A stretch of DNA of 33,901 bases from Octopus bimaculoides (GCF_001194135.2 NC_069009.1:6298530-6332430), one strand, 5' to 3'; positions 4,230-32,207 are shown, numbered from the stretch's first letter. Numbers and translations: made by a program. The notes: a model not told the origin generated them from the letters alone.

Positions 4230-4673
4230 CAGGGATGGGCAACTTTTTGTCAACGGGGGGAGGGGGGTTCATCGTACCATTTCCAACAGGGTGAGGACCA
4301 CATGATAAAACACAGATGCATGAGATATTACTTGCCCACTTTACACTGAATTTTTTGCAGTTCTTCTTAATTTTATTTGTCGTAGTATGAAATTTTATTT
4401 GTTTTATTATGAAATTTTATTTGTTTTATTATGAAATTTTATTTTCTTAGTATGAAATTTTATTTGTCGTAGTATGAAATTTTATTTTCTTAGTATGAAA
4501 GTTTATTTTCTTAGTATGAAATTTTATTTGTTTTATTATGAAATTTTATTTGGCGTAGTATGAAATTTTATTTGTCTTAGTATGAAGTTAGTAGCCTAGA
4601 AACTCGTCAAGGGCTGCACAACAGCATGTCAAGGGCCACATGTGGCCCTCGGGCTGCAGGTTGCCCATGCATG
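4230..4673. mobile_element. hAT-type non-autonomous DNA transposon (MITE)
   Basis: 14-bp TIRs CAGGGATGGGCAAC (4230-4243) / GTTGCCCATGCATG (4660-4673); 8-bp TSD CACTAAAC (4222-4229) / CACTTAAC (4674-4681); subterminal palindrome GGGCCACATGTGGCCC. Confidence 0.85.
4368..4587. repeat. 21-22-bp minisatellite, ~10 copies (ATGAAATTTTATTTGTCGTAGT variants)
   Basis: ATGAA starts at 4387, 4409, 4431, 4452, 4474, 4495, 4516, 4538, 4560, 4582. Confidence 0.95.
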
Positions 4674-6645: not shown

Positions 6646-6790
6646 GTGGCTGTGTGCTAAGTATCTTGCTTACCAACCACATGGTTCCGGGTTCAGTCCC
6701 TTGGGCAAGTGTCTTCTACTATAGCCTCGGGCCGACCAAAGCCTTGTGAGTGGATTTGGTAGACGGAAACTGAAAGAAGCCGGTCGTATA
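6646..6790 (+). mobile_element. SINE family A head (rest lies in the gap)
   Basis: GGAGTGGCTGTGTGCTAAG...GGTTCAGTCCC (A/B boxes) followed by TTGGGCAAGTGTCTTCTACTATAGCCTCGGGCCGACC. Confidence 0.9.
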
Positions 6791-6794
6791 TATG

Positions 6795-6827
<33 letters not shown>

Positions 6828-7154
6828 NNNNNNNNNNNNNNNNNNNNNNNNNNNNNNNNNNNNNNNNNNNNNNNNNNNNNNNNNNNNNNNNNNNNNNNNN
6901 NNNNNNNNNNNNNNNNNNNNNNNNNNNNNNNNNNNNNNNNNNNNNNNNNNNNNNNNNNNNNNNNNNNNNNNNNNNNNNNNNNNNNNNNNNNNNNNNNNNN
7001 NNNNNNNNNNNNNNNNNNNNNNNNNNNNNNNNNNNNNNNNNNNNNNNNNNNNNNNNNNNNNNNNNNNNNNNNNNNNNNNNNNNNNNNNNNNNNNNNNNNN
7101 NNNNNNNNNNNNNNNNNNNNNNNNNNNNNNNNNNNNNNNNNNNNNNNNNNNNNN

Positions 7155-7639: not shown

Positions 7640-8415
7640 CTCACAAAGATGATAAGGGTCCAAGACTCCAGGTGGTTTGCTATGCTTGAGTAGACATGTG
7701 AAGCAAAGTAGAATAAGTAAAATCGTGGCTGTCCATGCATGTCCTATACATTCCTCTCCCAGATTCTAGTCTTGTGGCTTGTGGGTGCTGGTGTCACATA
7801 AAGGTACCCATGTTGGTGCCATATAAAAGTACTGTGCCTATGCCAAATAAAAGCCCCCATGATGGTGCCCCTGATGATATCACATAAAAGTGCCTGATTC
7901 AGGGCACACATAAAAATGCTTGTGTCAGTGCCACGTAAAAGTGCTCATGTTGGTGCCGCATAAAAGTGCCCACATCAGTGTCACATAAAGTATCTGCACT
8001 GGTGCCACATAAAATTGCCCATACAGATGTCACATAAATGTGCCAGTGTAACATAAAAGGACTTGTGCCAGTGCCACATAAAAGTGCACATGTTGGTGCC
8101 GCATAAGAGCACCCATGCCAGTGACATGTAAAGTGCCTGTGCTGGTGTCACATTAAAGCACCCGTACAGGTGCCATATAAAAGCACCCATGTCAGTGCCA
8201 CATAAAATTGCCCTTAACAGTTGCAACATAAAAGCGCCCATGCTGGTAAAAGCACCTACTATTCTCTGTAAAGTGGTTGACATTAGGAAGGATGTCCAAC
8301 CGTAGAAACCATGCCACAACAGATAAATGCAGCCCAAGCACCCCTCCGATTCACCAACTCTTGTCAAACTGTCCAACCCATGCCAGCATAGAAAACAGAC
8401 ATCAAAAGACGATGA
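7640..8415 (+). mobile_element. SINE-like family D with an internal ~24-bp tandem array and a (GAT)n tail
   Basis: About 19 copies of GTGCCACATAAAAGCACCCATGCTG-like units at ~7785-8255, then GGTTGACATTAGGAAGGATGTCCAACC...GTCCAACCCATGCCAGCAT...GATGATGA; matches 16830-17078 and 29010-29430. Confidence 0.8.
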
Positions 8416-8683
8416 TGACTAGGGTACTCCAAACTCTCATAATGCTTTGTTTTGTCCATAGAGACCATAATAGGAAGCAGTACTGAAGCTAAAATGTGAA
8501 AAATGCAGAGAAGAGAAGAAAGATGGCATCAAGAGATCTCTGGAGAGGAAAGTACTGAGGGTTCATGAGAACAGTCAGTGGGCTACATCAGTTTTATTGA
8601 TGATCTGTGTAACTATGGCTGAGTTAGAAAATTACTATTTTAAAGTCTCACAATGAGAGATATTCAGCAACAGTAATTTGGAG

Positions 8684-9010
8684 TAAAGATTGTTTCCCAA
8701 CAAAACATGCCAGTCCTGGTTTAGGATGAATGTTGTTGTAATTTAGCCCCAGGAGACATCATCTCCAGCTGGCTATATGATACGATCTGTGTCCGAACAA
8801 TTATTCTGTGCTGATGAAGGGAAACAACCCAGAAATCGTGATACACAGATATTGTTTTGAGCTGAGTGGGGGTGCTAGATTCCCTTGTTTGAAAATATAA
8901 GGACACAGATCATGTCATATAGCCAGCTGGAGATGATGTCTCCGGGGCTAAATTACAGCAACATTCGTCCTAAACCAGGACTGCCATGTTATGTTGGCAA
9001 GCAATCTTTA
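8684..9010 (+). mobile_element. Inverted-duplication element carrying a hammerhead ribozyme (Penelope-associated / retrozyme-like)
   Basis: Arms 8684-8794 and 8901-9010 are reverse complements (8 substitutions and 1 indel in 111 bp); the spacer contains the HHR; colinear homology to 20996-21088. Confidence 0.75.
8795..8857 (+). ncRNA. Type I hammerhead ribozyme motif (10.1-11.1 pair mismatched)
   Basis: Stem I TCTGTG/CACAGA extended by GAACAAT/ATTGTTT across an internal loop; CTGATGA 8811-8817; stem II GGG-AAACAA-CCC flanked by A.A; GAA 8832-8834; near-palindromic stem III ATCGTGAT; AUA triplet, predicted cut after 8843. Confidence 0.75.
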
Positions 9011-9129
9011 TGGCTTAGTTTGTTGTCCACCTAAGGTACATGTATGTATATGTGTTTATGTGTGTTCATAATGTATATAGCTCCATTGCAGTTGATATAT
9101 ATATATATATATATAAATATAAAACTTCC

Positions 9130-9265
9130 CACACCAGTGCCACATGAAGCACCTGCATTGTTGCCATGTAAAAGTGCCCCTACAGATGTCACATAAATGT
9201 GCCAGCATCGCATAAAAGCACTCGCGTCAGTAAAAGCGCTCGTGCCACGTAAAAGTGCACATGAA
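9130..9265 (+). repeat. Partial family D ~24-bp array
   Basis: GTGCCACATGAAGCACC / GTGCCACGTAAAAGTGC units as in 7785-8255. Confidence 0.7.
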
Positions 9266-9453
9266 CTCCAGGACGGAAGCCATAGGGAGTTGTTAACATA
9301 TTTGGAAATTTTTACTTCAAAATTGGAAAGCTCTAGCTATCAAGCAAAGGAAGAAAACTTGCCCAGCCATAATTTTTCTAAGAGGAATATTTCTTGAACT
9401 ATCACCAGGGTTCTTGTGTTTTAAGAAAAAAACCTTTGCAGAGAACAGTTATC

Positions 9454-13063: not shown

Positions 13064-13968
13064 TGAAGGCATGTGGCTTAGTGGTTAGGGACTTCAGCTT
13101 GCAATCCTAAGGTCATGTGTTCAGTTCCTGGCAGTGCATTGTATCCTTAATCAAGACACTTTACTTCACCTTGCTCCAGTCCACTTAACAGGCGAAAATG
13201 TGCTGTACTTATAATTCAGAGGGGTCAGTCTTTTCACATTTTGTGTCATGCTGAATCTCCCTGAGAACAACGTTAAGGGTTACGCATGTCTCAGGAATAC
13301 TCAGCCATTTGCACTCTCTTTTACTCTTTTTACTCTTTTACTTGTTTCAGTCATTTGACTGCGGCCATGCTGCAGCACCGCCTTTAGTCGAGCAAATCGA
13401 CCCCAGGACTTATTCTTTGTAAGCCTAGTACTTATTCTATCGGTCTCTTTTGCCGAACTGCTAAGTTACAGGGACGTAAACACACCAGCATCGGTTGTCA
13501 AGCGATGGTGGGGAGACAAACACAGACACACAAACACACACACATATATATATACATATACATATATATACGACGGGCTTCTTTCAGTTTCCGTCTACCA
13601 AATTCACTCACAAGGCGTTGGTCAGCCCAAGGCTATAGTAGAAGACACTTGCCCAAGGTGCCACGCAGTGGGACTGAACCCAGAACCATGTGGCTGGGAA
13701 GCAAGCTACTTACCACACAGCCACTCCTATGCCTATGCACNNNNNNNNNNNNNNNNNNNNNNNNNNNNNNNNNNNNNNNNNNNNNNNNNNNNNNNNNNNN
13801 NNNNNNNNNNNNNNNNNNNNNNNNNNNNNNNNNNNNNNNNNNNNNNNNNNNNNNNNNNNNNNNNNNNNNNNNNNNNNNNNNNNNNNNNNNNNNNNNNNNN
13901 NNNNNNNNNNNNNNNNNNNNNNNNNNNNNNNNNNNNNNNNNNNNNNNNNNNNNNNNNNNNNNNNNNNN

Positions 13969-14001
<33 letters not shown>

Positions 14002-14236
14002 CATATATACGACGGGCTTCTTTCAGTTTCCGTCTACCAAATTCACTCACAAGGCGTTGGTCAGCCCAAGGCTATAGTAGAAGACACTTGCCCAAGGTGC
14101 CACGCAGTGGGACTGAACCCAGAACCATGTGGCTGGGAAGCAAGCTACTTACCACACAGCCACTCCTATGCCTATGCACGTTAATTTTATGATCAGATCA
14201 GCTGGAACCTTTGTCATCACAACTGATGTAGTACCA
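13064..14236 (+). mobile_element. SINE family B (head type B1) interrupted by a family A SINE
   Basis: TGAAGGCATGTGGCTTAGTGGTTAGGG A-box and GTTCAGTTCC B-box; body stops at TTGCAC (13313) and resumes ATGCACGTTAATT (14174), with TGCAC duplicated. Confidence 0.8.
13314..14173 (-). mobile_element. Full-length SINE family A nested in family B (head appears twice because of a gap-flank duplication)
   Basis: Near-consensus copy at 13314-13734; 13969-14179 repeats 13546-13740 across the N gap. Confidence 0.9.
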
Positions 14237-14244
14237 GTTTTTAG

Positions 14245-14532
14245 TGAGGTTGCGTGGCTTGTAAGGCTGTCAGTTCAATTCCCAGTGGTGTAGTGTGTCC
14301 TTGGGCAAGACACTTTATTTCACACTGCTCTGGTTCACTCACCTGGCAATAAAGAGCTGTACCTGTATTTCAAAGGGCCAACCTTGTGACACACTATGTC
14401 ATGCTAAATCACCCTGAAAACCACTTTAAGGGTACATGTGTCTGAGGAGTACTCAGCCACTTGTACATTAATTCCAGGAGTAAGTTGTTTCATTGATTGG
14501 ATCAACTTGTCATTGTAACAGATGGAACACCA
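14245..14532 (+). mobile_element. SINE family B, diverged copy with a shortened head
   Basis: GTTCAATTCCC B-box, CCTTGGGCAAGACACTTTATTTCAC, and the shared tail AAGGGTACATGTGTCTG..GAGTACTCAGCCAC. Confidence 0.8.
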
Positions 14533-14649
14533 CTCTTCATTATCCTCATCGCTTTCCTTGTCATCATTATCATCATCCCCGTTGTCATCATCATCATCAC
14601 CATCATCATTATCATCATCTTTGTTGTTGTCATTATTATCTCCACTTAA

Positions 14650-15223
14650 GAGAAGGTTAAAGAAGGTCTTCATCCATGTAAGGTGGTGTAATCGTTTATT
14701 GGGATATGAAAGGTTTAGTCCGCTTTACACTTTTAAACCCAAACCAAACGATAACGAAGGAGATCTACTGCGAGCAGCTTGAGTGGCTTAAGTCAGCGCT
14801 AGAAGGAAAATGATCATCTTTGGTTTCAAGATGAAAGGTGTTCTTCCATCAGGATAAATGCTCAGCCACTTACAACAAGGATGACATTCCAAAAATTGGA
14901 GCAGTTTCAATGGGAAACGATGCCTCACTAACCATATTCATCAGACATTGCCCCAAGTGATTATCATTTATTCTGCAGTCTTTGAAATCATTTGGACGGA
15001 AAAAATATGAATTCTATAGACAAGATCAGAACAGTACTGGAGGAGTATTTTTCATCGAGGACAACTGAATTTTGGAAGAGAAGCCTTGCAAGTCTACCAG
15101 ATAGATCGAAGAGCATTGTAGAAAATGAAGGAGAGTATAGTTTAGATTAAAAAAAGAACTTTGTTTATCTTAATTTTGAAAAATAAAAGTATAAAAAACT
15201 GCATTATTTATGGGATGACCCAA
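14650..15223 (+). pseudogene. Mariner (DD34D) transposase 3' relic with right TIR
   Basis: Manual translation with frameshifts and stops: KEGLHPCKV / WDMKGLVRFTLLNPNQTITKEIYCEQLEWLK / FFHQDNAQP...WETMPH*PYSSDIAPSDYHLFCSL*NHLDGK...SLPDRSKSIVENEGEYSLD* (stop 15148-15150). 34 residues separate the last two catalytic D. TIR (RC TTGGGTCATCCCATAAATAATGCAGTTTTT) ends at 15223, followed by TA. Confidence 0.92.
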
Positions 15224-15230
15224 TATATAT

Positions 15231-15911
15231 ATAATATGGTATAATCTTCCATACATGGACATGACTACAAATAAAGCTAGATGATTTCTGAAATTTGTAG
15301 ATATCCTTTTCTCACACTCAAATAAATATCACAAGATCTTTGATAGAAACACAGTTAAAGTTAGCTACAATTGCCTCCCCAACACAGGTTCAATGATCTT
15401 CAATCACAATAAAGATAATACCATAAGAAACATCCCTCATAGATTATGTAATTATTTTACAGCTGCTGATAACTGTCCACCAAACAATATGTGCCTGCAA
15501 AAAGATCTGGTCACAAGACTAATATCTCTTACACTGATTACATCACAAGAATTTACATTGATATAATTGAAAATACCTTCAAGGAAAGATACACACAGCA
15601 CTTGGCTTTGCTTGGAGAAAAGAATAGATGATATACATCTTTGTCAAACATGATATAGAAACTTAAAGGTAGGAGCATGGATAATCCACCCAAAACTGGA
15701 GCATCACAGCTACAACAACTATAAGGGATGAAACAACAGATGTAACTTCTGTATCACAGAGAAATTAAGCATCACAACATCAACAACAAACATTTTTAAC
15801 AATAGGAAAGAAACCTTCTCCCATTGCATGCACAAATACCAATTTAAATTAGGAGCTTTCAAGCATGACCCATTGTCCACCTTAGCATGTATCCAACGAG
15901 GATCAATTTAA
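15231..15911 (+). pseudogene. Penelope-like element relic: Cys-rich linker plus GIY-YIG endonuclease region (Neptune-like)
   Basis: IIWYNLPYMDMTTNKAR*FLKFVD...YHKIFDRNTVKVSYNCLPN...LCNY...NCPPNNMCLQKD / IYIDIIENTFKERYTQH...TSLS / CNFCITEKLSI...FNNRKETFSHCMHK. These match the remembered PLE motifs IIWFNPPY, HKIFNRNTVKVSYSC, YIG.TE..FK.RY..H and C.LCL.EK...LN.R.E...C.H. Confidence 0.85.
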
Positions 15912-16168
15912 GATATAATGTTGATGTTGATTTTATGCACAACATGCATGATAGACATTTACTCCCAAGAAATCATGCTTGAATTCTAAACTGCACAGAT
16001 ATGTGTAACATACACATAACACTTACAAGACATCATGCAGCTTGCGAAATATATTTCATAGATTAATGCATATTCAAAACCCATGGAAACCCGATAAATG
16101 AGAAGATGCACATGTGCATACATCAAATGTTCAGTACATTAGTATACTTTAGAATATTCTTATATATA

Positions 16169-16564
16169 CTCTTTACTCTCTCTTTACTCTTTTACTTGTT
16201 TCAGTCATTTGACTGCGGCCATGCTGGAGCACCGCCTTAAGTCAAGCAAATCGACCCCAAGACTTATTCTTTGAAAGCCTAGTACTTATTCTATCGGTCT
16301 CTTTTGCCGAACTGCTAAGTTACGGGGGACGTAAACACACCAGCATCGGTTGTCAACCGATGTTGGGGGACAAACACAGACACACATATACATATACATA
16401 CGATGGGCTTCTTTCAGTTTCCGTCTACCAAATCCACTCACAAGGCTTTGGTCGGCCCAAGGCTATAGTAGAAGACACTTGCCCAAAGTGCCACGCAGTG
16501 GGACTGAACCCAGAACTATGTGGTTTGTAAGCAAGCTACTTACCACACAGCCACTCCTGCACCT
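16169..16564 (-). mobile_element. Full-length SINE family A
   Basis: Near-consensus head, microsatellite middle and tail. Confidence 0.95.
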
Positions 16565-16829
16565 ATATGTGAAAAATGCCAAAACCAATGTAAAGAAAAA
16601 AACAACTGAAAAAGTTACCACATGAATTGCCTCCCCTTATATGTGTCTCTATCACTTTCGAAGTCTCACATAACCTCATATAATCTCATCCAAAATGAAC
16701 GTGATTACCAACATTTTAAAGTGGGATGCTTGAAGAATTGTGAAAATTTCCACATGAAACCAACTTACTAATTTCCTACACCTTGATCCATGGATCTTTC
16801 CTTTACATATCATAATGTATATATATCAG

Positions 16830-17078
16830 GATCATCATCATCATCATCGTTTAACGTCCGCTTTCCATGCTAGCATGGGTTGGACGATTTGACTGAGGAC
16901 TGGTGAAACCGGATGGCTGCACCAGGCTCCAATCTGATTTGGCAGAGTTTCTCCAGCTGGATGCCCTTCCTAACGCCAACCACTCAGAGAGTGTAGTGGG
17001 TGTTTTTACATGCCACTAGCACTAGGGCCAGTCAGGCAGTACTGGCAACGGCCATGCTCAAAAGGGCCTCCAAAGAAA
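16830..17078 (-). mobile_element. SINE-like family D 3' portion
   Basis: (CAT)n CGTTTAACGTCCGCTTTCCATGCTAGCATGGGTTGGAC...CTGGATGCCCTTCCTAACGCCAACCAC. Confidence 0.85.
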
Positions 17079-17087
17079 AAGTCCTGG

Positions 17088-17175
17088 GGTTGATTTGCTC
17101 GACTAAATGTGGTGCTCCAGCATGGCCACAGTCAAATGACAGAAACAAGTAAAAAGAGTAAAAAAAAAGAGTAAA
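17088..17175 (+). mobile_element. SINE family A 3' tail fragment
   Basis: GTCCTGGGGTTGATTTGCTCGACTAAATGTGGTGCTCCAGCATGGCCACAGTCAAATGACAGAAACAAGTAAAAAGAG. Confidence 0.85.
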
Positions 17176-17378
17176 AGTCTGGGAACCTTTTGATACCCCC
17201 TCATATAAACATTCTGGTATATAATTGCTTTACAAAATTACTTAAGCAGACATTATAGTCAAGCGATTTGGGACAAGATGGAAAAGAATGGTGCAATCAA
17301 GACAGAATTGGAAGTGCATTGTGATCAGTGGTGTATAACAGCATCTGATGGTCTGGTTGATACTCTGATACTTTGAGA

Positions 17379-17410
<32 letters not shown>

Positions 17411-17423
17411 AATAGAGAAAAAA

Positions 17424-17775
17424 AATTTTTTAATTCTCAAATGCGTGATAATGCTAATAAATAGCGTGATCAGGATAAATTATCCATACGTTGCAGAAAA
17501 ATATGTTACAAGCCAGCCATGAGACTCGAACACACATGTCAAGTGCTTTAGCATTAAGCTAAACTCTCCAGTAATGAATTCTTCTGCAATTTTAGAACTT
17601 ATGCTAACGTTAAATTCAACTTATGATGAAAGTAAACAAACAAAGTTTGTTTTAGAAGCGTTGAGATGTATTGAAAGATACAGAAATAATTTTTTTTAAT
17701 TCTCAAACGCATGATAATGCTAATAAATAGCGTGAGCAGGATAAATTATCCATGCATTGCAGAAAAATACGTTAC
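17424..17775 (-). repeat. ~86-bp direct repeats (period 266 bp) enclosing a tRNA-like Pol III-type segment
   Basis: 17424-17509 matches 17688-17775; the minus strand of 17511-17570 has TAGCTTAATGCT (A-box-like) and GTTCGAGTC (B-box). Confidence 0.65.
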
Positions 17776-17934
17776 CAGATATAAATACGTTACGGATAAT
17801 ATATCCATACTTTGCAGTCCCACACAAACGCAAAACATGTGCATGTGTGAAAAAATGTAAGAATGGTAGTACACAATATATGGACATAGCCCCAGATTTT
17901 AACTTATGAAGATTATTAGGGCGTACATATGCTT

Positions 17935-18180
17935 CTAAAGTGGATGCACAAGGCAAACTGGTTAGAGTGGTGGACTCATAAATGTAAGATTCTGGTTTCA
18001 ATTCTGGACTGGATGATATACTGTGTTCTTGAGCAAAACACTGCATTTCACATTCCCTCCAGTCCACTCAGCTGGTAAAAAGGAGTGATGGCTGTGATGG
18101 ACTGGCGTCCTATCCAGGGTGGTATATATATGTCAGAGAAACTTGGAAACTGGCCCCTTATGCGGACTAACCCTATATGC
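17935..18180 (+). mobile_element. Diverged tRNA-derived SINE (B1-like head and core, different 3' module GATGGACTGGCGTCCTATCCAGGG)
   Basis: CTGGTTAGAGTGG...GGTTTCAATTC; TTGAGCAAAACACT...CCAGTCCACTCAGCTGG shared with family B1. Confidence 0.7.
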
Positions 18181-18189
18181 CTATGAAAC

Positions 18190-18499
18190 TGAATAATGTG
18201 CAACCTAGACAACATGTTACAACACACACATACATATATATACACACTAGCACACATACAAATACACACATGCACACACACACACACACGTATGTGTATA
18301 ATGAGGTCTCAGGAAAGCGTATGTTTGAACATACATGATGTACATGCAATTATTAACACCCCTGTATATACTCAGTGAGCAATTATCTATGTGTGTGTGT
18401 GTGTGTGTGTGTACACACACACACAAGCACACACATTCATAATTGAGGAAAACCATAAATTTAATAGATGCCTGTTTATAATAACAACAACAATGAAAA

Positions 18500-18530
<31 letters not shown>

Positions 18531-18745
18531 AAGAAACGCACAAAAGACAAATCACACCCTGCTACTACTTCCTACAACAACAACTATTCAACACCAGCGC
18601 CACCACTACTACTACTACTACTAATAATGATGATAACAGTAAAAATAATAATAATAATAATAATTATGTACTTTGATATATATGTATGTAGGTGAGTGTA
18701 TAAATATATATATATATATATATACATACATATATATATATATAG

Positions 18746-18801
<56 letters not shown>

Positions 18802-19121
18802 CCTTATACACATTTCTGGTAATTATAAATACCATTGAACAAAGGAAGAGATTTGTACTGAGCAACCGAGCCCAAATTGGTTAATATATATAATATGTCT
18901 AACCACACACTGTGAATGAGATTATTTATATTTTTCTGAGCACAAGTATGATGTATATTGTGTGCGGCTGCATATATATATATATATGCAAACACACACT
19001 TTAAGTATATATATATATACACGCATATGTATTAAAAGTATATATACACACACATATATATTAAGCATATATGTGTATATATATATGTATATATATAGGG
19101 GGAGAAGGAGAAAGATTTATA

Positions 19122-19173
<52 letters not shown>

Positions 19174-19227
19174 TACATACATATATACACATACATATAG
19201 AAGCATTTATATATATATATATAACAT
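18190..19227. repeat. Microsatellite-rich stretch: (CA)n, (GAA)n, (TAA)n, (TA)n
   Basis: Direct inspection. Confidence 0.8.
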
Positions 19228-19483
19228 TTGAGAGACATGCAAGACATGGATGCGGAGGTCTTCAAGACAAAGCTCAACGCTTTCCTCTCCACAGTACCAG
19301 ACGAACCAATGGCTCGTAATGAGACGCAGTTTAGGGCAGCTATGTCAAATTCTCTTATACACCAGATGTGCCATCAAAACTCTTGATTGGACCATGTCAG
19401 GTGGGGGAGAAGAGCCATGCAAGGAACGTGAAAATCACGGTGGTGCACCAGCATGACTGCAGCCACTTGGCTGAAACACATAA

Positions 19484-19490
<7 letters not shown>
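19228..19490 (+). mobile_element. CR1-clade LINE 3' end (ORF2 C-terminus plus 3' UTR)
   Basis: 19228-19386 translates LRDMQDMDAEVFKTKLNAFLSTVPDEPMARNETQFRAAMSNSLIHQMCHQNS*, fitting the FK..LD.FL..VPDEP...AA.SNSL terminus of invertebrate CR1 ORF2; the UTR ends ...GGCTGAAACACATAAATAAATA. Confidence 0.8.
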
Positions 19491-19527
<37 letters not shown>

Positions 19528-19625
19528 GTTTATTATATATAAATGCAGGTACATATATATATGTAAATGTAAGAATGTGTGTTTGTGTATATATAGGGTC
19601 TTATATATCTGTTATATATATGTAC

Positions 19626-19666
<41 letters not shown>

Positions 19667-20674
19667 TATATAGATACATTTATAAAAAATAAGTGTATCA
19701 CTTGATAAACAAATAAATATACAAGTGCACATGCATATATATGCACAAATACATATGCACATGTGCAAAAGCACCATACACTCACTCAGATGTGTGCATC
19801 AAACACACACCCATGTATACATACATTAACATATACATATATAAATATTTGCCTATAAACAAATATATATATATATATGTATGTATGTATATATATGCGC
19901 ACTCACGTATATGTATATGCATGACAGTTATTATAGGTGACTGCTATTTCCTGTAACACTGTGCTGGCTTTTACTTGATACACATTTCTTTAGGCATTAT
20001 TATTTTCAAATAAAGATTTTAAAAAATATCCTAAATTCCCTTATTGTTGAAATTTGAATTGAAATTAAATTTAAATTCATGTAGCCTGCTGTTTGAAAGT
20101 CTCTAGCAGAAAAAAAGAAACATGTTTAAAAACGTAAGCATAAATTTCCTTCTGTGCAAAATGTATAAATCTGTCTCCTACATTGAATATCATAGCAGAT
20201 ACAGTACTTCAACCACGGAAAATTTGCATCTCTTCCTTCCGTTAAATGGTTCCATTTTATACCCACTTCTTGCTTCTATTATGTGTTTCCAGTTTAAATC
20301 CACACCATTTACTACACCTTCTTTGAGGTTCTACATGTGTTGTGTTGGTGAATCATAGTTGCTTCTGTCAGTATTTTTTAATGAATGTGTGTGTGTGTTA
20401 TACATCATGTTTTGATGGTGTTTTCTGTTAATATCACATAAGCTTTTTTTTTATTTTTCAAAAATAGAAATAATACATGTCTAAATCTCTCAGAGAGATT
20501 TATACAGTAGTAACACTATAAAGTGGTGGTATGTTGTCAACTTAATGTGACAGTCTCATGAGAGGGAATAATACTACTGCTATTTAGTCCTAGGAAGCAC
20601 TGCTTCTTGTTGGCCTTGACACATTTCCTGTGTCCTTATGTTTACAAAGTGGGAGATAAGCACCTCCACCCAGC

Positions 20675-20740
20675 AAAGCCAGCATCCAGAGACTAGTTTC
20701 TGAGTCATTGCTCATCATCAGTTTGGAGTAGCATGGCTTG
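20675..20740 (-). ncRNA. Minimal type I hammerhead ribozyme (GUC site, palindromic stem III)
   Basis: Minus strand reads TCCAAA-CTGATGA-TGAG CAATGA CTCA-GAA-ACTAGT-C-TCTGGA; one mismatch in stem I. Confidence 0.85.
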
Positions 20741-20929
20741 CTAGCTGTCAATCCTATCTGCCTCTGTAAACATAATAATTCAAGTGAAATACACTCACAG
20801 ATAATGATAACTACTGTATAAATCTCTCATAGAGATTTAGAAATATATTATTTCTATTTTTGAAATCAGTGAATGTATTTCACTTGAATTATTATATGTT
20901 TACAGAGACAGATAGGTATTGACAGCTAG

Positions 20930-20995
20930 AAAGCCAGGCTACTCCAGACTGATGATGAGCAATGACTCAGAAACTATTCTCTGGATGCTGGCTTT
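20930..20995 (+). ncRNA. Minimal type I hammerhead ribozyme (stem III mutated, UUC triplet)
   Basis: AAAGCCAG-GCTAC-TCCAGA-CTGATGA(20949-20955)-TGAG CAATGA CTCA-GAA-ACTATT-C(20979)-TCTGGA-TG-CTGGCTTT: 6-bp plus 8-bp stem I with an internal loop. Confidence 0.85.
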
Positions 20996-21569
20996 GCTGG
21001 GTGGAGGTGCTTATCTCCCCCTTTGTAAACATAAGGACACAGGAAATGTGTCAAGGCCAACAAGAAGCAGTGCTTCCTAGGGCTAAATAGCAGTAGTATT
21101 ATTCCCTTTTTCATGGGACTGTCACATTAAGTTGACAACGTAACACCAAGCTTTTTTCCTTTATTCCAGTTGTTGATTTTACTTTAAGCTCTACACTTCT
21201 ATTTATTAGGAATCCTCGTTAGTGAAAGAAGATTAGTGTATTTCTTTCTACAAATGAATTATAATTGATGCATTGCTACTTTTCTTTTTATGCAGTTGGA
21301 GTGAGTCTCTCTTATCCAAACAACTGTAGCTCTTTTTGTGAAATTCTCTTAAATATATTTTTCATGTTGGTGTGCACTTTTCAATATGAAAAATTTCCAT
21401 TTTATATGTGTGGTGATAGTTATGCTATATGTAGGGATGTACCATGTTATCTTTCTATCTATTTCTATGCTCAGTATTTATATACATATGTTTATATGCA
21501 TGTATGTCATTATTTAGTTTTATTTAAAAATTTCTTGCCAACAGAGAAAGAGCCATCTTGTTTGTTGTT

Positions 21570-21615
21570 AACACAACATTTCGGCTGATATACCCTCCAG
21601 CCTTCATCAGGTGTC
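21570..21615 (-). ncRNA. Minimal type I hammerhead ribozyme (stem III ACGT mutated to ATGT)
   Basis: Reverse complement of the 21763-21808 motif with one substitution. Confidence 0.7.
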
Positions 21616-21762
21616 TTGGGGAAATTTTGAACGTGGGTTCTCATTCCTAACGATGTTACTATTATTATATTATTATTATTATTATTATTAATACTATTAT
21701 TAATCAGGTCGCTGCCGTGAATCATCGTTAGGAATGAGAACCCAGGTTCGAAATTTCCCCAA

Positions 21763-21808
21763 GACACCTGATGAAGGCTGGAGGGTATATCAGCCGAAAC
21801 GTTGTGTT
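21763..21808 (+). ncRNA. Minimal type I hammerhead ribozyme (palindromic stem III, likely acting as a dimer)
   Basis: GACAC-CTGATGA(21768-21774)-A-GGCTG GAGGGTATAT CAGCC-GAA-ACGT-T(21803)-GTGTT; GUU triplet. Confidence 0.78.
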
Positions 21809-22304
21809 AACAACAAACAAGATGAGGACAAATATCCGTCAAATGTAAATAATGTAAATAATTCCTCATCTCTTAAATATAGAACTGTAGAGAAAGAGCC
21901 AGTTTCTAATCTGGACCCAAGGTTCCTTCATTGGAATGTCAACAACAGGGTATTTTTGTTTGTATGTTTATAGACATGCAGATTTGTATGTTTTCTTTTA
22001 TGCATGTCCTCATGCAAATACTTGCATATCTAGACATGCTCATATATATTTAAATGATAAACTTCTAGAAAGTTTTACAGATTCTTACAGTTCTAGTGAT
22101 GGCTTGGATTTCTAGTCATTGAATCAGCTTTCTCCTTCCTGATTTTGAGAAGCCTAATTTCCCAAGATTGGTATTTAGGCAGTGTTTTACATGTATGTAT
22201 GTATGTATGTATGCATGTATGTGTGTGTATGTATGTATGTTTGTATGTATGTATGTTTGTATGTATGTATATGTGTGCATGTGTATGTGTGTGTGTGTGT
22301 GTGT

Positions 22305-23210
22305 ATTTGCTGTCTCTTTTCAATTTACAGTAAGTCTTGACTGACTGCCTACATTTTAGTAAGGTTGTGAAGGAAATTATCCTGATTTAATTGTCATCCT
22401 ATAAATCTTAAGAAGTTCTTGCAGACTTTTACAGTCTCCGATATCCTGATCATTTGTAGTGTGTGAATTAAGGATTTTCATTCTCCCTCCAAGAACCAAG
22501 ATCAGCCTTACTTTGCTCCAAACCAATTAGTATATTTCCTGTTGTTCCAATAACGATAGGTAAGAGGCTGAAAGTTTATCTTCATTACTGGATTGGCAAA
22601 CTCCTTACCAATGATCCATAGATGTCCTCTTTGCTCTTGTATTTTTCTAACCACATTCGTGTCCAGAAGGCAGCCGATTTCAACAACAGAACACAACTTT
22701 CTTTTGTGGTCCCACACAACGATATCTGACCAGTTGTGGTTTAATTTGTTGGCTGATTTAATTTTCAAGTTCCACCAATATTCTTTTGACCCATCAGTCT
22801 CAATATAATCAGCTTCATTTGTAGGAGGTATTCTCTTTTTATCGTGTTATCCTGTTCCAGATTGTTCTGTCTGCTGCATCCTCCCTCTTGAGAAGATAAT
22901 ATCGGGAAGACATTCTCCCGCAGTTGACAATAATATGATGGATGTCTTCAGTCCTGGTCTTGCACAGCCTACATTTGTTGTCTGTCAATGTTTTCTGCCT
23001 CTTATGTTTTTGGTACTTGGTGGGGGTGGGGGTCTCTTGTTCTTGGATTGCATAGATGTAGCCTTCAAAGAGGGATGCCACAAACTTGTCGGTACTCCAT
23101 GCCAAGATGTTGATAGGCTCGACCCCTTCATTGGTTTTTGTTTTATGTGCCAAGTCCCCATGTACTATCTTCTCAGGGAACTGGTTAGTTTTTTTCTTCA
23201 GTTGTTCTGA
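22305..23210 (-). pseudogene. RLE-type non-LTR retrotransposon relic: CCHC zinc knuckle plus PD-(D/E)xK endonuclease
   Basis: HGDL..KT...EGYIYAIQEQ...DNKCRLCKTRTEDIHHIIVNC..MSSRYYL; KIKSANKLNHNWSDIVVWDHKRKLCSVVEIGCLLDTNVVRK; C-terminus LIHTLQMIRISETVKVCKNFLRFIG* (stop 22394-22396). Confidence 0.9.
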
Positions 23211-23230
23211 TATGTATATATGTATGTATG

Positions 23231-24044
23231 TCATTATTCAGTTTATTTCAAGATTTCTTGCCAACAGAGAAAGAGCTGGTTTCTAACCTAGATCCAAGGC
23301 TTCTTCATTGAAATTTCAACACCATTAACTGGGTATTTTTGTATGTATGTATGCATATGTGGAGATTTGTATGTTTTGCCTTGTGTATGTATTCTCATGC
23401 ATATAGCTACATATCTAAACATGCTCATATATATTTAAATGATAAACTTCTAGAAAGTTTTACAGATTTTTACAGTTCCCATGATAGCTTGGATCTGTAG
23501 CTTTCAAATCAGCTTTCTCCTTTCTGGTTCTGAGAAACTTAATTTCTCAAGATTGGTATTTAGGCATTGTGTTACATATCCTAGTGGAGGCGCAATGGCC
23601 CAGTGGTTAGGGCAGCAGACTCGCGGTCATAGGATCGCGGTTTTGATTCCCAGACCGGGCGTTGTGAGTGTTTATTGAGCGAAAATACCTAAAGCCCCAC
23701 GAGGCTCCAGCAGGGGATGGTGGTGAACCCTGCTGTACTCTTCCACCACACCTTTCTCTCACTCTTACTTCCTGTTTCTGTTGTGCCTGTAATTCAAGGG
23801 GTCAGCCTTGTCACATTCTGTGTCACGCTGAATATCCCCCGAGAACTACGTTAAGGGTACATGTGTCTGTGGAGTGCTCAGCCACTTGCACGTTAATTTC
23901 ACGAGCAGGCTGTTCCGTTGATCGGATCAACTGGAACCCTCGACGTCGTAAGCGATGGAGTGCCAACAACAAAATACATATCCTAGGGCCCCCAATAATT
24001 ACAGGTATAAACCTGAACTTGTAATCTAGATAGAGTTGCTGCAG
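23231..24044 (-). mobile_element. RLE-type LINE 3' fragment, copy 3, split by a SINE
   Basis: With the SINE removed it reads LQQLYLDYKFRFIPVIIGALGYVTQCLNTNLEKLSFSEPERRKLI*KLQIQAIMGTVKICKTF*KFII*; both ends abut (CATA)n. Confidence 0.85.
23585..23974 (+). mobile_element. Full-length SINE family B (head type B2) with TSD
   Basis: GGAGGCGCAATGGCCCAGTGGTTAGGG A-box, GGTTTTGATTCCC B-box, (AAC)n tail; 12-bp TSD TACATATCCTAG (23573-23584 and 23975-23986). Confidence 0.92.
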
Positions 24045-24119
24045 ATGTATGTATGTAGGTATGTACCGTTTGTTCTATGCACTTTAATTTGTTTTTAGTT
24101 CGGGTTTAGTATAGGAAAG

Positions 24120-24888
24120 CTTTATTTAATCTTTTTCATCTTTCTTCCAAACCTTCCTACTGCATTCTCTTCCTATATCAGACTCATCCTTTCACTCTTT
24201 TCCTCTCTCTCTCTATCCAGTCTATCTCTCTCTTTCTAGACATACACTCTCTCTCATTCTCTCCCTCTATCTACCTTTCTTTCCCTGGTTTGCCTCTCTT
24301 CCCTGCCACTCTCTGTTAATCCCACCACCACTACCTCTTTCATGATCACTCATACCCTCTCTCTGAATATATTAAGCTGACTCTTTAAATAACTTTCTTT
24401 CTCTCTTTCTAATTATATTAACTCCAGCTTTTCTATATCTCTTGCTCTCTCTCTCTCTATCTATCTATCTATCTGTCTGTCTGTCTGTCTGTCTAACTCT
24501 CCACATCTATATTAAGTTTGCTCTTTCTATATCTCTCTCTCTCTGTGTGCCTCCCTCCCTCCCTCCCTCCTTCCACTCCCTCCAACCACATTAACTCTAC
24601 ATTAACTCTATACCGCCATCTTTCTCTCTCTCTTTCTCTATGTCTATCTATCTCTCTTTCTTTCTTTCTTTCTATCCAACCATCCATCTCTCTCATTCTC
24701 TTCCTCTCTCGCTCTCACTTTGCCTTTTACTTTCTCTCTCTGTCTCTATCCATTCCTTTCTCTCTATCTATCCATCTCTCCTTCTTCCTTTCTTTATTTC
24801 TTTCTGTCTTTCTTTCTTCCTTTCTCCATCATTTTCTTCTTTCATTCTTTGTCTTTAACTACCCACCTCTATCTGTCCTCTGTTTGTT

Positions 24889-24919
<31 letters not shown>

Positions 24920-24922
24920 GTA

Positions 24923-24959
<37 letters not shown>

Positions 24960-24969
24960 GTATCTCTCA

Positions 24970-25001
<32 letters not shown>

Positions 25002-25057
25002 ATATCTATCTGACTGTCTGTGTATCTATCCATCTATCTATCTGACTCTGATGTCTG

Positions 25058-25100
<43 letters not shown>

Positions 25101-25760
25101 CTCCGACTGTCTGTCTGTCTATTTGTCCATCCATCCATCCATCCATCCGCCTCCTTCCTTCCATATCCCTCCCCCTCACCCAATTCTCACCCTTCCCACT
25201 TCACCAACTATATTAACTAACCACTTCCTCCCACGACCACCACCACAATTGCATTAAGCCCTATTACCACCAACTAGCCATATTTAGAGGAAGGGGAACG
25301 CTAGTGTCAGTCTGTTGGTTGGTGGCAGAGGGAGTGCATCCTTGTTTAAATGTCTCCCCTCCAGTTCCATATAATTTAATTATCGACCATGTCAACCGGA
25401 ACATTTTATACTCTCACCGCTACCACAGTCATTTGTTGGTTAGTGGGGTGGCTGGGATGGAGATGATCGTGGTGGTGGTGGTGGAGGGGTTGTGGTTGTG
25501 ATGGTGGGAGTGGGGTGGTAGTAGTGGTAGTAGTGGTGGTAGTGGTGGTGGTAGTGGTGGTAATGGTGGTGGTAGTAGTTGTATTAGTAATTGTAGTAGT
25601 AGCAGTGGTAGTAGTAGTAGTAATGGTGGGGTGGTAGTGGTGGTAATGGTGATAGTGATGGTGGTGGTGATGGTGGCGGTGGTGGGATGGTGGTAGTGGT
25701 TCTTGTAAATAGTGTTAGTAGTGATGGACCTTGTGGTGGTTGTAGAGACTGTGTTCTGTG
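24120..25760. repeat. (CT)n/(CTAT)n/(CTGT)n pyrimidine tract followed by a (GGT/AGT)n tract
   Basis: Direct inspection. Confidence 0.85.
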
Positions 25761-25861
25761 TCCCTTGAAGGGAAATAACACTCGAAAGCTAGAATTGGGA
25801 CTGAAACCTTGCATCTGGAAGGTCACCAGATGGTCAAAACACTCAACCAGTTCAGCAATGC

Positions 25862-26025
25862 ACATGGAAGTATGGCCCTGTGTTAAAGACGCTTGTTTAG
25901 TAACCACATGGTTTCAGGTTCAATCCCACTGTGTGACACCTTCAGCAAGTGTATTCTACTCTGGTCCTGGATAAACTAAAACCTTGTGAATGGATTTTGT
26001 AGGTGGAAACTGAAAGAAACCCGCT
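25862..26025 (+). mobile_element. Diverged SINE family A head
   Basis: AACCACATGGTTTCAGGTTCAATCCCACTGTGTGACACCTTCAGCAAGTG...GGAAACTGAAAGAAACCCG. Confidence 0.8.
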
Positions 26026-26167
26026 TGTGTGTGTGTCTGTGTGTGTGCATGCATGTAATTAATTATTTGGACTTTGGGTATACGTTTAGTAGTATACCAG
26101 TTAAAGCACTTCCACTGTTTAGGCTATCTGATGTCATCTGCAGTTTTGATATAAATTCATTATATAT

Positions 26168-26752
26168 AGGCGCAGGAGTGGCTGAGTGGTAAGTAGCTTG
26201 CTTACCAACCACATGGTTCCGGGTTCATTCCCACTGCGTGGCACTTTGGGCNNNNNNNNNNCATTCCCACTGCGTGGCACTTTGGGCAAGTGTCTTCTAC
26301 TATAGCCTCGGGCCGACCAAAACCTTGTGAGTGGATTTGGTAGACAGAAACTGCAAGAAGCACGACTAGGTGAAAAGCGCTTTATTTAATATGTGACATG
26401 AATAAAAATCTGTAAATGTACAAACATCCAGATTTCTGAGTACCTTAATTTTTTTCTATATAATTTCTGTACATCACCTCCAAACCTTCAAATATATATA
26501 TGTATATATATATATGTATATATATATATGTATGTGTGTGTATATGTTTGTGTGTCTGTGTTTGTCCCCCCAACATCGCTTGACAACCGATGGTGGTGTG
26601 TTTACATCCCTGTCACTTAGCGGTTCGGCAAAAGAGACCGATTGAATAAGGCTTCCAAAGAATAAGCCATGGGGTCGATTTGCTCGACTAAAGGTGGTGC
26701 TCCAGCATGGCCACAGTCAAATGACTGAAACGAGTAAAAGAGTAAAGAGTAA
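26168..26752 (+). mobile_element. Full-length SINE family A with a ~125-bp internal insertion
   Basis: AGGCGCAGGAGTGGCTGAGTGG...GGTTCATTCCC head; non-family sequence at 26367-26490; tail GACTGAAACGAGTAAAAGAG. Confidence 0.9.
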
Positions 26753-30971: not shown

Positions 30972-31611
30972 AAGGCAGCTAGCTGGCAGAATGATTAGTG
31001 CTCTAGGCCATATGCATAGCAACATTTGGTCCATCTTTACATTCTGAGTTCAAATTCTGCCTGAGTCGGCTTTGCCTTTCATCCTTCCAGGGTCAACAAA
31101 AAAAAGCACCTATCCCCACCCCCAAATTTCAGGCCTTGTGATTTTAGTAGAAAGGATTATTATTATTACTATTATTATTATGAAGGTGGTGAACTGGCAG
31201 AGTCGTTAGCATGCTGGACGTAATGCTTAGTGGTATTTCACCAGTTGCTACATTCTGAGTTCAAATTCCACCGAGGTCGACTTTGCCTTTCATCCTTTCA
31301 AGGTCAATAAATCAAGTACCAGTGAAATACTGGGGATTGATGTAATAGACTAGTCCCCAACTGTCAAATTTCAAGGCTTGTGCTTAGAGTAGAAAGGACT
31401 ATCATTATTATCATCATAATCGTTAGCATATCTGGAGAAATGCTTAGCAGTATTTCGTCTTTCGCTACATTCCAAGTTCAAATTGTGCAAAGGTTGACTT
31501 TGCCATTCATCTTTCGGGGGTCAATAAATTAAGTACCAGTTGTGTACTAGGGTCAATGTAATCAGCTATCCTCCTCCCCACATTTCAGGCCTTGTGTCTA
31601 TAATAGAAAGG
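30972..31611 (+). mobile_element. Three tandem SINE family C copies (30972-31156, 31182-31400, 31418-31611)
   Basis: Repeated GAGTTCAAATT(C) B-box and TTTGCC.TTCATC.TT..GGGTCAA body, separated by (TTA)n. Confidence 0.85.
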
Positions 31612-31731
31612 ATTATTATTATTATTATTGTTGTTATTATTATTATTGTTGTTATTATTATTATTGTTATTATTATTATTATCATTATCATTATTATTAT
31701 TCTCATTATTATTATTATTATTATTATTATT

Positions 31732-31790: not shown

Positions 31791-32207
31791 TCTCTTTTAC
31801 TCTTTTACTTGTTTCAGTCATTTGACTGTGGCCATGCTGGAGCACCGCCTTAAGTCTAGCAAATCGACCCCAGGACTTATTCTTTGTAAGCCTAGTACTT
31901 ATTCTATCAGTCTCTTTTGCGGAACCGCTAAGTTACGGCGATATAAACACACCAGCATCGGTTGTCAAGCGATGTTGGGGGAACAAACACAGACACACAA
32001 ACAGACACACAAATACACATACATATATATATATACATATACACGATGGGCTTCTTTCAGTTTCCCTCTACCACATCCACTCACAAGGTTTTTGTCGGCC
32101 CGAGGCTATAGTAGAAAACACTTACCCAAGGTGCCATGCAGTGGGGCTGAACCCGGAACCATGTGGTTGGTAAGCAAGCTACTTACCACACAGCAACTCC
32201 TGCGCCT
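31791..32207 (-). mobile_element. Full-length SINE family A
   Basis: Near-consensus copy flanked by (TTA)n. Confidence 0.95.

What the first reader, a model, noticed from the sequence alone, without database searches (positions are those of the whole stretch)
20440..21157. Two circularly permuted ~350-nt hammerhead monomers, head-to-head: footprint of a circular RNA (retrozyme) template
The repeats are interleaved (A-B-A'-B') rather than nested. In HHR-sense terms the left copy (minus, ~20802 to 20456) reads B' then A', and the right copy (plus, ~20801-21148) reads A' then B'. Each is about one full unit starting at a different point of the same cyclic sequence (~346-351 nt), as expected from reverse transcription of a circle or concatemer. 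The consensus of the two copies gives a perfect HHR (TCCAGA/TCTGGA stem I, ACTAGT palindromic stem III, GUC site); each copy has lost a different base. The unit also has a TAAATCTCTC-A-GAGAGATTTA hairpin (20482-20502). AAGCTTTTTT flanks the whole structure (20440-20449 and 21148-21157), a possible TSD.
Basis: partly seen in the sequence, partly recalled or inferred. Interest (0 to 1): 0.9.

Follow-up and report, generated by a model that had tools for sequence, protein, structure and literature searches.

The report
Inverted hammerhead-ribozyme retroelement insertion, Penelope-style
Two inverted copies of a ~350-base repeat carrying a self-cutting hammerhead RNA motif entered an animal genome in one event whose layout matches Penelope-like retroelement insertions, so this is a new example of a known kind, not proof of an RNA-circle template.

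Summary
At 20456-21148 two ~95% identical copies of a ~350-nt unit lie head-to-head. Their segments interleave (left, minus strand, reads Y'-L-X'; right, plus strand, reads X'-Y'). AAGCTTTTTT flanks the whole and occurs nowhere else in the window. Each copy carries a type I hammerhead with one damaging mutation. Rfam does not detect it, but a descriptor scan is significant.

A second, ~62% identical relative at 8628-9009 keeps the fold: 6 of 12 helix pairs changed on both sides and every core base is intact. It has its own flanking duplication and the same layout: inverted arms with 3' ends outward, one ending at an AC-rich stem-loop, the other 56-68 nt further on.

Head-to-head arms, a one-sided "tail" and variable duplications in AT-rich DNA are the published signature of Penelope-like element (PLE) integration, which extends both target strands from two internal start sites. 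I read this as an ORF-less hammerhead repeat (animal non-LTR retrozyme, or pLTR derivative) mobilised by PLE machinery.

The template spanned a unit junction, so it was a multimer or a circle. The recurring 3' ends show the "permutation" is not arbitrary. A circle is allowed, not required. Nothing outside the window could be retrieved.

The parts
20440..20455 (+). Left target-site duplication: AAGCTTTTTT exact (20440-20449), possibly extended by TTTATT
   Evidence: The 10-mer occurs only here and at 21148.
20456..20523 (-). 'Tail' of the left (minus-strand) arm: X' (20456-20511, contains palindromic hairpin 20482-20502) plus the 12-nt linker L (20512-20523). It extends beyond the point where the right arm ends.
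   Evidence: The counterpart in locus 2 is 8628-8683.
20524..20802 (-). Y' segment of the left arm. It carries hammerhead copy 1: helix I 20727-20722 with 20690-20685, core CUGAUGA 20721-20715, cleavage after C at 20691. Helix I has a G to A mismatch.
20803..20809 (.). 7-nt filler (AATGATA) at the head-to-head junction of the two 5' ends
20810..20864 (+). X' segment at the 5' end of the right arm (palindromic hairpin 20819-20839). It is directly continuous with Y', which proves a unit junction in the template.
20865..21148 (+). Y' segment of the right arm. Hammerhead copy 2: closing stem 20930-20937 with 20988-20995; helix I 20943-20948 with 20980-20985; core 20949-20955; helix II 20956-20959 with 20966-20969; GAAA 20970-20973; cleavage after C 20979; helix III has G to U. 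A 3' stem-loop UGUCA/UGACA is followed by the AC-rich end ...ACGUAACACCA.
21148..21165 (+). Right target-site duplication: AAGCTTTTTT exact (21148-21157), possibly extended (CC)TTTATT
8614..8625 (+). Locus 2, left target-site duplication TATGGCTGAGTT
   Evidence: 11/12 identical to 9009-9020; 14 of 2000 shuffles reach the score.
8628..8794 (-). Locus 2, inverted 5'-truncated arm (unit positions ~167 to ~338), including a 56-nt tail at 8628-8683
   Evidence: nhmmer E=5e-43, by construction
8795..9009 (+). Locus 2, plus-strand 5'-truncated arm with a structurally intact hammerhead: helix I 8805-8810 with 8844-8849, core 8811-8817, H17 = A at 8843. A 3' stem-loop UGCCA/UGGCA follows.
9009..9020 (+). 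Locus 2, right target-site duplication TATGGCTTAGTT

Best explanation
The region is one retrotransposition insertion (20450/56-21147) of a non-autonomous, ORF-less repeat of ~350 nt that encodes a type I hammerhead ribozyme. That makes it an animal 'non-LTR retrozyme', or equivalently a Penelope-like-element (PLE) pLTR derivative.

Shown:
- Two inverted copies lie with 5' ends facing and 3' ends outward, bracketed by a 10-bp (perhaps 16-18-bp) duplication of an AT-rich target.
- Both unit junctions are present, so the template exceeded one unit.
- The hammerhead fold is conserved by compensatory changes in a diverged relative.
- That relative at 8628-9009 has its own flanking duplication and the same asymmetric architecture.

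Inferred mechanism: a PLE reverse transcriptase/GIY-YIG endonuclease nicked both strands of the target and extended both on retrozyme RNA. Reverse transcription started at one of two internal sites. One site lies just after the AC-rich 3' stem-loop (right arm). The other lies 56-68 nt downstream, after the palindromic hairpin (left arm), which produces the one-sided 'tail'. The two minus-sense cDNAs met and were joined through a 7-nt filler.

The template was a multimeric transcript or a circular monomer; the data do not decide between them. Since insertion the arms have diverged ~5%, and each hammerhead has acquired one destabilising substitution. The copies are therefore decaying relics, not active sources.
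For: Anatomy.

Single event: the 10-mer flank occurs only at the two borders, and the extended match is 16/18.

Hammerhead:
- The descriptor gives 1 hit against 0.003 expected.
- Three-sequence covariation gives 91.7% of cells paired, against 14-44% for slid controls. Six of 12 pairs changed on both sides, and all core bases are invariant.
- The MFE folds recover helix I, helix II and a closing stem in all three copies, although the closing stems differ in sequence (AAAGCCAG/CUGGCUUU versus AACAAU/AUUGUU).
- The unit folded as a circle is more stable than shuffles (z = -4.2 and -6.5; 61-63% paired).

Second locus with the same architecture. Its 3' stem-loop is kept with a compensatory change (UGUCA/UGACA versus UGCCA/UGGCA).

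Literature:
- PLE insertions often have an inverted 5'-truncated copy adjacent at the 5' end and an extension at one end (PMC8557442).
- A purified PLE protein cleaves and extends both strands, prefers AT-rich DNA, and starts reverse transcription at two internal sites in an AC-rich stem-loop that delimit the tail (PMC11167929).
- Animal retrozymes are 150-450-bp units with type I hammerheads, and PLEs are their proposed mobilisers (PMC7229834; bioRxiv 10.64898/2026.07.22.740005).
- Dual hammerheads on opposite strands 100-700 bp apart were seen in Schistosoma (PMC4209133).
Against: - No PLE ORF (RT or GIY-YIG) was seen in the window. The only RT trace is a weak zf-RVT fragment of a non-LTR element.
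- Homology of the unit to any PLE pLTR could not be tested.
- Only two loci (four arms) are available. No other copy could be retrieved from any collection.
- The tail is 56-68 nt, longer than the 30-40 bp described.
- No head-to-tail tandem array is present in the window.
- Rfam's hammerhead models do not match.
- The base of helix II is U-A (locus 1) or A.A (locus 2) instead of the usual G-C.
- Self-cleavage is untested.
Confidence: 0.7

Rival explanations
1. Each arm is a cDNA of a monomeric circular retrozyme RNA, started at a different point of the circle and ended after one lap.
For: - The left arm is exactly one unit. It begins at AUCUGUG and ends at ...UUUUUGAAA, which are adjacent in the right copy (20855-20875).
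- The right arm is 4-12 nt short of one unit.
- Neither arm ends at the GUC cleavage site, which fits a re-ligated circle.
- The unit folds as a stable circle.
- The published retrozyme model has target-primed circRNA as the template (PMC7229834).
Against: - The two start points recur in the independent locus 2, whose arms are only ~167 and ~215 nt. The end points therefore reflect defined RT start sites plus ordinary 5' truncation.
- In the model proposed for PLEs a linear multi-copy RNA is the template, and it gives the same junctions.
- Unit-length arms could come from a roadblock at the next start site on a multimer, or from chance.
- The published circle model predicts tandem cDNA, not an inverted pair.
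Confidence: 0.3
2. A hammerhead-bearing SINE-like element (like Schistosoma Sm-alpha) copied by a LINE, with 'twin priming' producing the inversion.
For: - Twin priming gives an inverted 5' part plus TSDs of 7-20 bp (established L1 knowledge, recalled from memory, not looked up here).
- A decayed non-LTR RT fragment lies 1.7 kb away.
- The target is T-rich. If TTTATT is not part of the duplication, the left arm ends in AAUAAAAAAAAA.
Against: - The inverted architecture with a one-sided extension occurs in 2 of 2 loci, whereas I would expect twin priming to affect only some copies of a family (my expectation, not checked here).
- The right arm and both arms of locus 2 have no A-tail or microsatellite tail.
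- The A-rich stretch is better read as part of a 16/18 duplication.
- The template must have been longer than one unit, which is not SINE-like.
Confidence: 0.1
3. A DNA-level origin: an inversion or foldback within a former tandem array, or a MITE/foldback DNA transposon.
For: There are long inverted repeats and a flanking direct repeat.
Against: - Un-inverting the left half gives Y'-L-X'-X'-Y', which is not a head-to-tail dimer. One inversion cannot explain the layout (logic).
- The outermost ends are not inverted repeats of each other, because the tail is on one side only.
- Duplication lengths differ between loci (10-18 versus 12 nt), unlike the fixed length typical of DNA transposons (general knowledge).
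- The internal junctions differ between loci, as expected for independent 5' truncation.
Confidence: 0.05
4. A hairpin-RNA, miRNA or siRNA gene, or an assembly artefact.
For: Rfam gives sub-threshold matches to plant miRNA precursor models over 20712-20958 (67 bits). The window is a gapped draft with 11 N runs.
Against: - The miRNA scores are far below gathering (67 versus 211; 34 versus 171). They follow from any long hairpin.
- The arms differ at ~5% of positions and sit in a gap-free 12-kb stretch with a precise flanking duplication.
- A second locus has the same design.
- A transcript through the locus would form dsRNA, but that would be a consequence, not the origin.
Confidence: 0.04

Closest known systems
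Metazoan non-LTR retrozymes (Cervera & de la Pena 2020, PMC7229834): newt/axolotl satellite 2, mussel and coral hammerhead repeats
   Same: - The unit is ~350 nt, inside the published 150-450 bp range and equal to the mussel (350-390) and axolotl (330/350) sizes.
- GC is below 50%, and there is no LTR and no ORF.
- The hammerhead is type I, with helix I of 6 bp plus internal loop and closing stem, helix II of 4 bp, and helix III of 2 bp with a palindromic cap (ACUAGU).
- The base of helix II is weak, as in axolotl HHR_Amex2.
- The TSD is larger than 4 bp.
- The predicted circle is highly self-paired.
   Different: - No head-to-tail array occurs here; there is one inverted pair per locus.
- Expression and circularity are unknown.
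- The sequence is unrelated to anything I could retrieve.
- The host is probably a cephalopod (my recollection of its SINE, not verified). I found no paper in the library that mentions retrozymes together with cephalopods.
Penelope-like element insertions (pLTR with hammerhead, inverted 5'-truncated copy, 'tail'; PMC8557442, PMC3846280, PMC11167929)
   Same: - The copies are inverted head-to-head with 3' ends outward.
- The extension sits on one arm only.
- The TSD is 10-18 nt in AT-rich DNA.
- A palindrome lies near the unit's 5' end and the inverted junction.
- The hammerhead is inside the repeat.
- The 3' end lies at an AC-rich stem-loop.
   Different: - There is no RT/GIY-YIG ORF between or beside the repeats.
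- X' both precedes and follows Y', so the repeat is a tandem of pLTR-like units, not the 3' stump of an autonomous copy.
- The tail is 56-68 nt rather than 30-40 bp.
- The hammerhead is of the 'canonical' kind, not the minimal PLE kind.
Schistosoma Sm-alpha and dual opposite-strand min-hammerheads (PMC4209133)
   Same: It is a hammerhead-carrying short interspersed repeat of ~330 nt. Pairs of hammerheads on opposite strands 100-700 bp apart were noted there; here they are ~260 bp apart.
   Different: No pol III/tRNA-like head was detected (ARAGORN found none), and there is no sequence similarity. I recall Sm-alpha being described as SINE-like (from memory).

Membership tests
Hammerhead ribozyme, type I | Conserved core: C3 U4 G5 A6 N7 G8 A9, G12 A13 A14, A15.1-U16.1, H17 | tested here: met
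   All are present in both arms of locus 1 and in locus 2 (H17 = C, C, A). They stay invariant across ~62%-identical copies.
Hammerhead ribozyme, type I | Three helices around the core, with helix I open and helices II and III capped, supported by covariation | tested here: met
   91.7% of cells are paired, against 14-44% in slid controls. Six of 12 pairs changed on both sides. MFE folds recover helices I and II and the closing stem. Only 3 sequences were available, 2 of them near-identical.
Hammerhead ribozyme, type I | G10.1-C11.1 pair at the base of helix II (usual in natural hammerheads) | tested here: not met
   It is U-A in locus 1 and A.A in locus 2. A weak helix II base is described for axolotl HHR_Amex2.
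Hammerhead ribozyme, type I | Match to Rfam Hammerhead_1 covariance model | tested here: not met
   No hammerhead family is listed at gathering score, nor at E<=10 on 1-kb or 86-nt slices.
Hammerhead ribozyme, type I | Site-specific self-cleavage after H17 | not testable with these tools
   This needs in vitro transcription of monomer and dimer constructs.
Metazoan non-LTR retrozyme | 150-450-bp unit with a type I hammerhead, low GC, and no LTR, PBS, PPT or ORF | tested here: met
   The unit is 347-352 nt with GC 0.37-0.39. Its longest ORF is 53 aa and has no homologue.
Metazoan non-LTR retrozyme | Head-to-tail tandem copies in the genome | tested here: inconclusive
   No tandem array is in the window. 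Both unit junctions are present within the arms, so the template exceeded one unit. The rest of the genome is not available.
Metazoan non-LTR retrozyme | [quoted passage not shown] | not testable with these tools
   No transcriptome is accessible. Only the predicted circular fold could be assessed (z = -4.2 and -6.5).
Penelope-like element insertion signature | Inverted 5'-truncated copy adjacent to the 5' end (head-to-head), flanked by a TSD | tested here: met
   Locus 1. Locus 2.
Penelope-like element insertion signature | Optional short 'tail' extension at the 3' end of one arm only (two alternative RT start sites) | tested here: met
   The tail is 68 nt at locus 1 (20456-20523) and 56 nt at locus 2 (8628-8683). 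In both it is on the arm opposite the one ending at the AC-rich stem-loop. It is longer than the published 30-40 bp.
Penelope-like element insertion signature | Element-encoded RT plus GIY-YIG endonuclease ORF | tested here: not met
   There is no such ORF at either locus or among window ORFs of at least 100 aa. The element is therefore non-autonomous.
Penelope-like element insertion signature | Sequence homology of the unit to the pLTR of an autonomous PLE in the same genome | not testable with these tools
   Neither Repbase nor the host genome is available.

The most novel reading that the evidence does not exclude
The locus is a direct genomic footprint of PLE-type target-primed reverse transcription on monomeric retrozyme circRNA. 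Each target strand primed on a circle at one of the two start sites, and synthesis stopped after exactly one lap when it reached its own start. That would explain why the left arm is one unit to the nucleotide and the right arm one unit minus 4-12 nt. It would also give the first structural evidence, in an invertebrate, that retrozyme circles are the substrate of the PLE machinery.
Probability: 0.25. Interest if true: 0.7.

Novelty: new member of a known kind. Interest (0 to 1): 0.4.

Why it matters
Animal hammerhead repeats (retrozymes) are abundant circRNA producers, but how they move is still inferred. The case for Penelope-like elements as their drivers rests on co-occurrence and, in Xenopus, on sequence similarity to pLTRs.

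Here two diverged members of one invertebrate family carry the PLE-specific integration scars: head-to-head arms, a one-sided tail between two fixed 3' ends, and variable duplications in AT-rich DNA. This is independent, structure-based support for that partnership. It also matches the 2024 in vitro finding that a PLE enzyme extends both strands from two internal start sites.

The locus adds a hammerhead variant that Rfam's models miss. It also suggests a simple genome-wide test, the distribution of arm lengths and 3' ends on the cyclic unit, that could separate circular from multimeric templates.

Tried and rejected
1. Rfam at gathering score over the whole window, and at E<=10 on 1-kb and 86-nt slices. 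No hammerhead came up. The only hits were sub-threshold miRNA and C/D-box models caused by the long hairpin and the UGAUGA string.
2. Retrieving other copies through proteins. The 53-aa ORF of the unit and the nearby zf-RVT ORF have no homologues in the protein collection.
3. Exact 26-nt hammerhead core against metagenome and viral contigs: 0 hits. The bacterial genome, phage, plasmid and E. coli collections were not searched because they cannot hold an animal repeat.
4. Other copies in the window by blastn and nhmmer. Only the four arms of the two loci were found.
5. Snap-back (self-priming) at the palindromic hairpin. The 16 nt between Y and the hairpin are not the reverse complement of the 25 nt between the hairpin and Y' (read), so this was rejected.
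6. A single inversion of a tandem dimer. Un-inverting gives X'-X' adjacency, so this was rejected.
7. Whether the 7-9 nt at the central junction are a remnant of linker L. About 6 of 9 match with an indel, which is too weak to decide.
8. Host identity. ARAGORN finds no tRNA. Octopus is my recollection of the SINE sequence only.

Full report
**Context.** The window is a gapped draft of an animal genome. It has 11 N runs, dense (TA)n/(TG)n/(ATT)n microsatellites, SINE-like repeats and ~33% GC. I suspect a cephalopod, from memory of the SINE sequence, but could not verify this. The finding lies in a gap-free stretch (13969-26251).

**What is there.**
- The repeat finder gives two sets of inverted repeats. 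One nested set pairs 20524-20802 with 20865-21148 (four blocks, 92-97% complementary). One interleaved pair joins 20456-20511 with 20810-20865 (93%).
- Read in the hammerhead sense, the left copy (minus strand, 20802 to 20456) is Y'(279)-L(12)-X'(56), 347 nt. The right copy (plus strand, 20810-21148) is X'(55)-Y'(284).
- The copies differ by 13 substitutions and 3 small indels in Y', and 4 substitutions in X'.
- Seven bases (AATGATA) separate the two 5' ends.
- AAGCTTTTTT flanks the whole and occurs nowhere else in 33.9 kb (expected 0.05). With a CC indel the match extends to 16/18.

**The hammerhead.**
- Rfam finds no hammerhead at any threshold tried.
- The sequence UCCAGA-CUGAUGA-UGAG-CAAUGA-CUCA-GAAA-C-UA-G-U-C|UCUGGA has every core nucleotide. 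Helix I is 6 bp, helix II 4 bp, and helix III 2 bp within the palindrome ACUAGU. Beyond an internal loop there is an 8-bp closing stem (AAAGCCAG/CUGGCUUU).
- This is the architecture described for 'canonical' metazoan type I hammerheads.
- A strict descriptor hits once in the window, against 0.003 expected.
- The usual G10.1-C11.1 pair is replaced by U-A.

**A second locus settles two questions.**
- A sensitive self-search found a ~62% identical relative at 8811-9000. Closer study shows an insertion at 8628-9009 with its own duplication (TATGGCT[G/T]AGTT, 11/12).
- First, its hammerhead keeps all core bases while helix I (UCUGUG/CACAGA), helix II, helix III and the closing stem (AACAAU/AUUGUU) have changed in a compensatory way. 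Six of 12 pairs changed on both sides. Paired cells are 91.7%, against 14-44% when partners are slid. The fold has been under selection in the family.
- Second, its architecture is the same as locus 1. A minus-strand arm (8794 to 8628) is truncated at unit position ~167 but runs through L and X'. A plus-strand arm (8795-9009) is truncated at ~position 65 and ends just after a stem-loop (UGCCA/UGGCA).
- That stem-loop corresponds, with a compensatory change, to UGUCA/UGACA at the end of the right arm of locus 1.
- In two independent insertions, then, one arm ends at the AC-rich stem-loop and the opposite arm ends 56-68 nt further on.

**Interpretation.**
- Biochemistry explains them. A purified PLE protein cleaves and extends both strands of AT-rich DNA. 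It starts reverse transcription at two internal sites in an AC-rich stem-loop of a multi-copy RNA, and the interval between those sites is the tail.
- In locus 1, X' both precedes Y' (right arm) and follows it (left arm) with no ORF between. The template was therefore a tandem or circular array of the short unit, that is, a retrozyme-type non-autonomous element. It was not the stump of an autonomous PLE.
- PLEs are already the proposed drivers of animal retrozymes.

**Circle or multimer?**
- The left arm is one unit to the nucleotide and the right arm nearly so. Neither ends at the GUC cleavage site. The unit folds as a stable circle (z = -4.2 and -6.5). These points fit a circular monomer.
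- The arms of locus 2 are ordinary 5' truncations, and the end points are fixed start sites. A multimeric transcript, as in the scenario proposed for PLEs, suffices.
- I put the circle-specific reading at about 0.25-0.3.

**Rejected alternatives.**
- LINE twin priming: there are no tails, and the architecture recurs in 2 of 2 loci.
- A single inversion of a dimer: un-inverting gives X'-X'.
- Snap-back at the hairpin: the flanks are not complementary.
- MITE or foldback: the ends are asymmetric and the TSD length varies.
- miRNA or hairpin gene: the Rfam scores are far below the cut-offs.
- Misassembly: the arms have diverged, the duplication is precise, and a second locus shows the same design.

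**Limits.**
- Only four arms in one window were available. No other copy, host genome, transcriptome or Repbase could be consulted.
- Cleavage activity, circular RNA and the identity of the autonomous partner remain untested.

**Verdict.** This is a real, well-formed feature and a new member of a known kind. Its value is modest but genuine, as structural support for the PLE-retrozyme link.

Noticed in passing
window 8614-9020: A second, ~62% identical member of the same hammerhead repeat family. It has its own TSD, inverted arms, a one-sided 56-nt tail and a structurally intact hammerhead (core 8811-8817).
   Followed up: yes
window 7800-8250 and 9120-9270: Two blocks of one ~25-nt satellite (TGCCACATAAAAGTGC...; higher-order period 143) bracket ~870 bp of unique DNA that contains locus 2. 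This suggests a larger insertion into a satellite array.
   Followed up: no
window ~6670-6830, 13560-13740, 14010-14190, 32000-32170: Several copies, in both orientations, of a SINE-like repeat lie next to (TA)n tracts and assembly gaps. ARAGORN calls no tRNA. From memory the sequence resembles octopus SINEs, which is the only clue to the host.
   Followed up: partly
window 22839-23234 (-): A 131-aa ORF gives a weak Pfam zf-RVT match (E=1.8e-4, below the cut-off). It is probably the decayed 3' end of a non-LTR retrotransposon and has no homologue in the protein collection.
   Followed up: partly
window 20712-20958: Rfam gives sub-threshold matches to plant miRNA precursor models (MIR8562 at 67 bits against a 211 cut-off; MIR6224). 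They are caused purely by the long inverted repeat and show how such loci can be mis-annotated as miRNAs.
   Followed up: yes
window 21352-21384 (-): A relaxed hammerhead descriptor (U3/A8-type core, helix I 5/6, helix II 3 bp) gives one extra hit 200 nt downstream of locus 1. It is AT-rich and probably chance.
   Followed up: no
window 31203-31625; 4369-4586: There is a 217-bp tandem dimer (75% matches) of another SINE-like sequence, and a 22-nt x 10 tandem array. Neither is explained.
   Followed up: no
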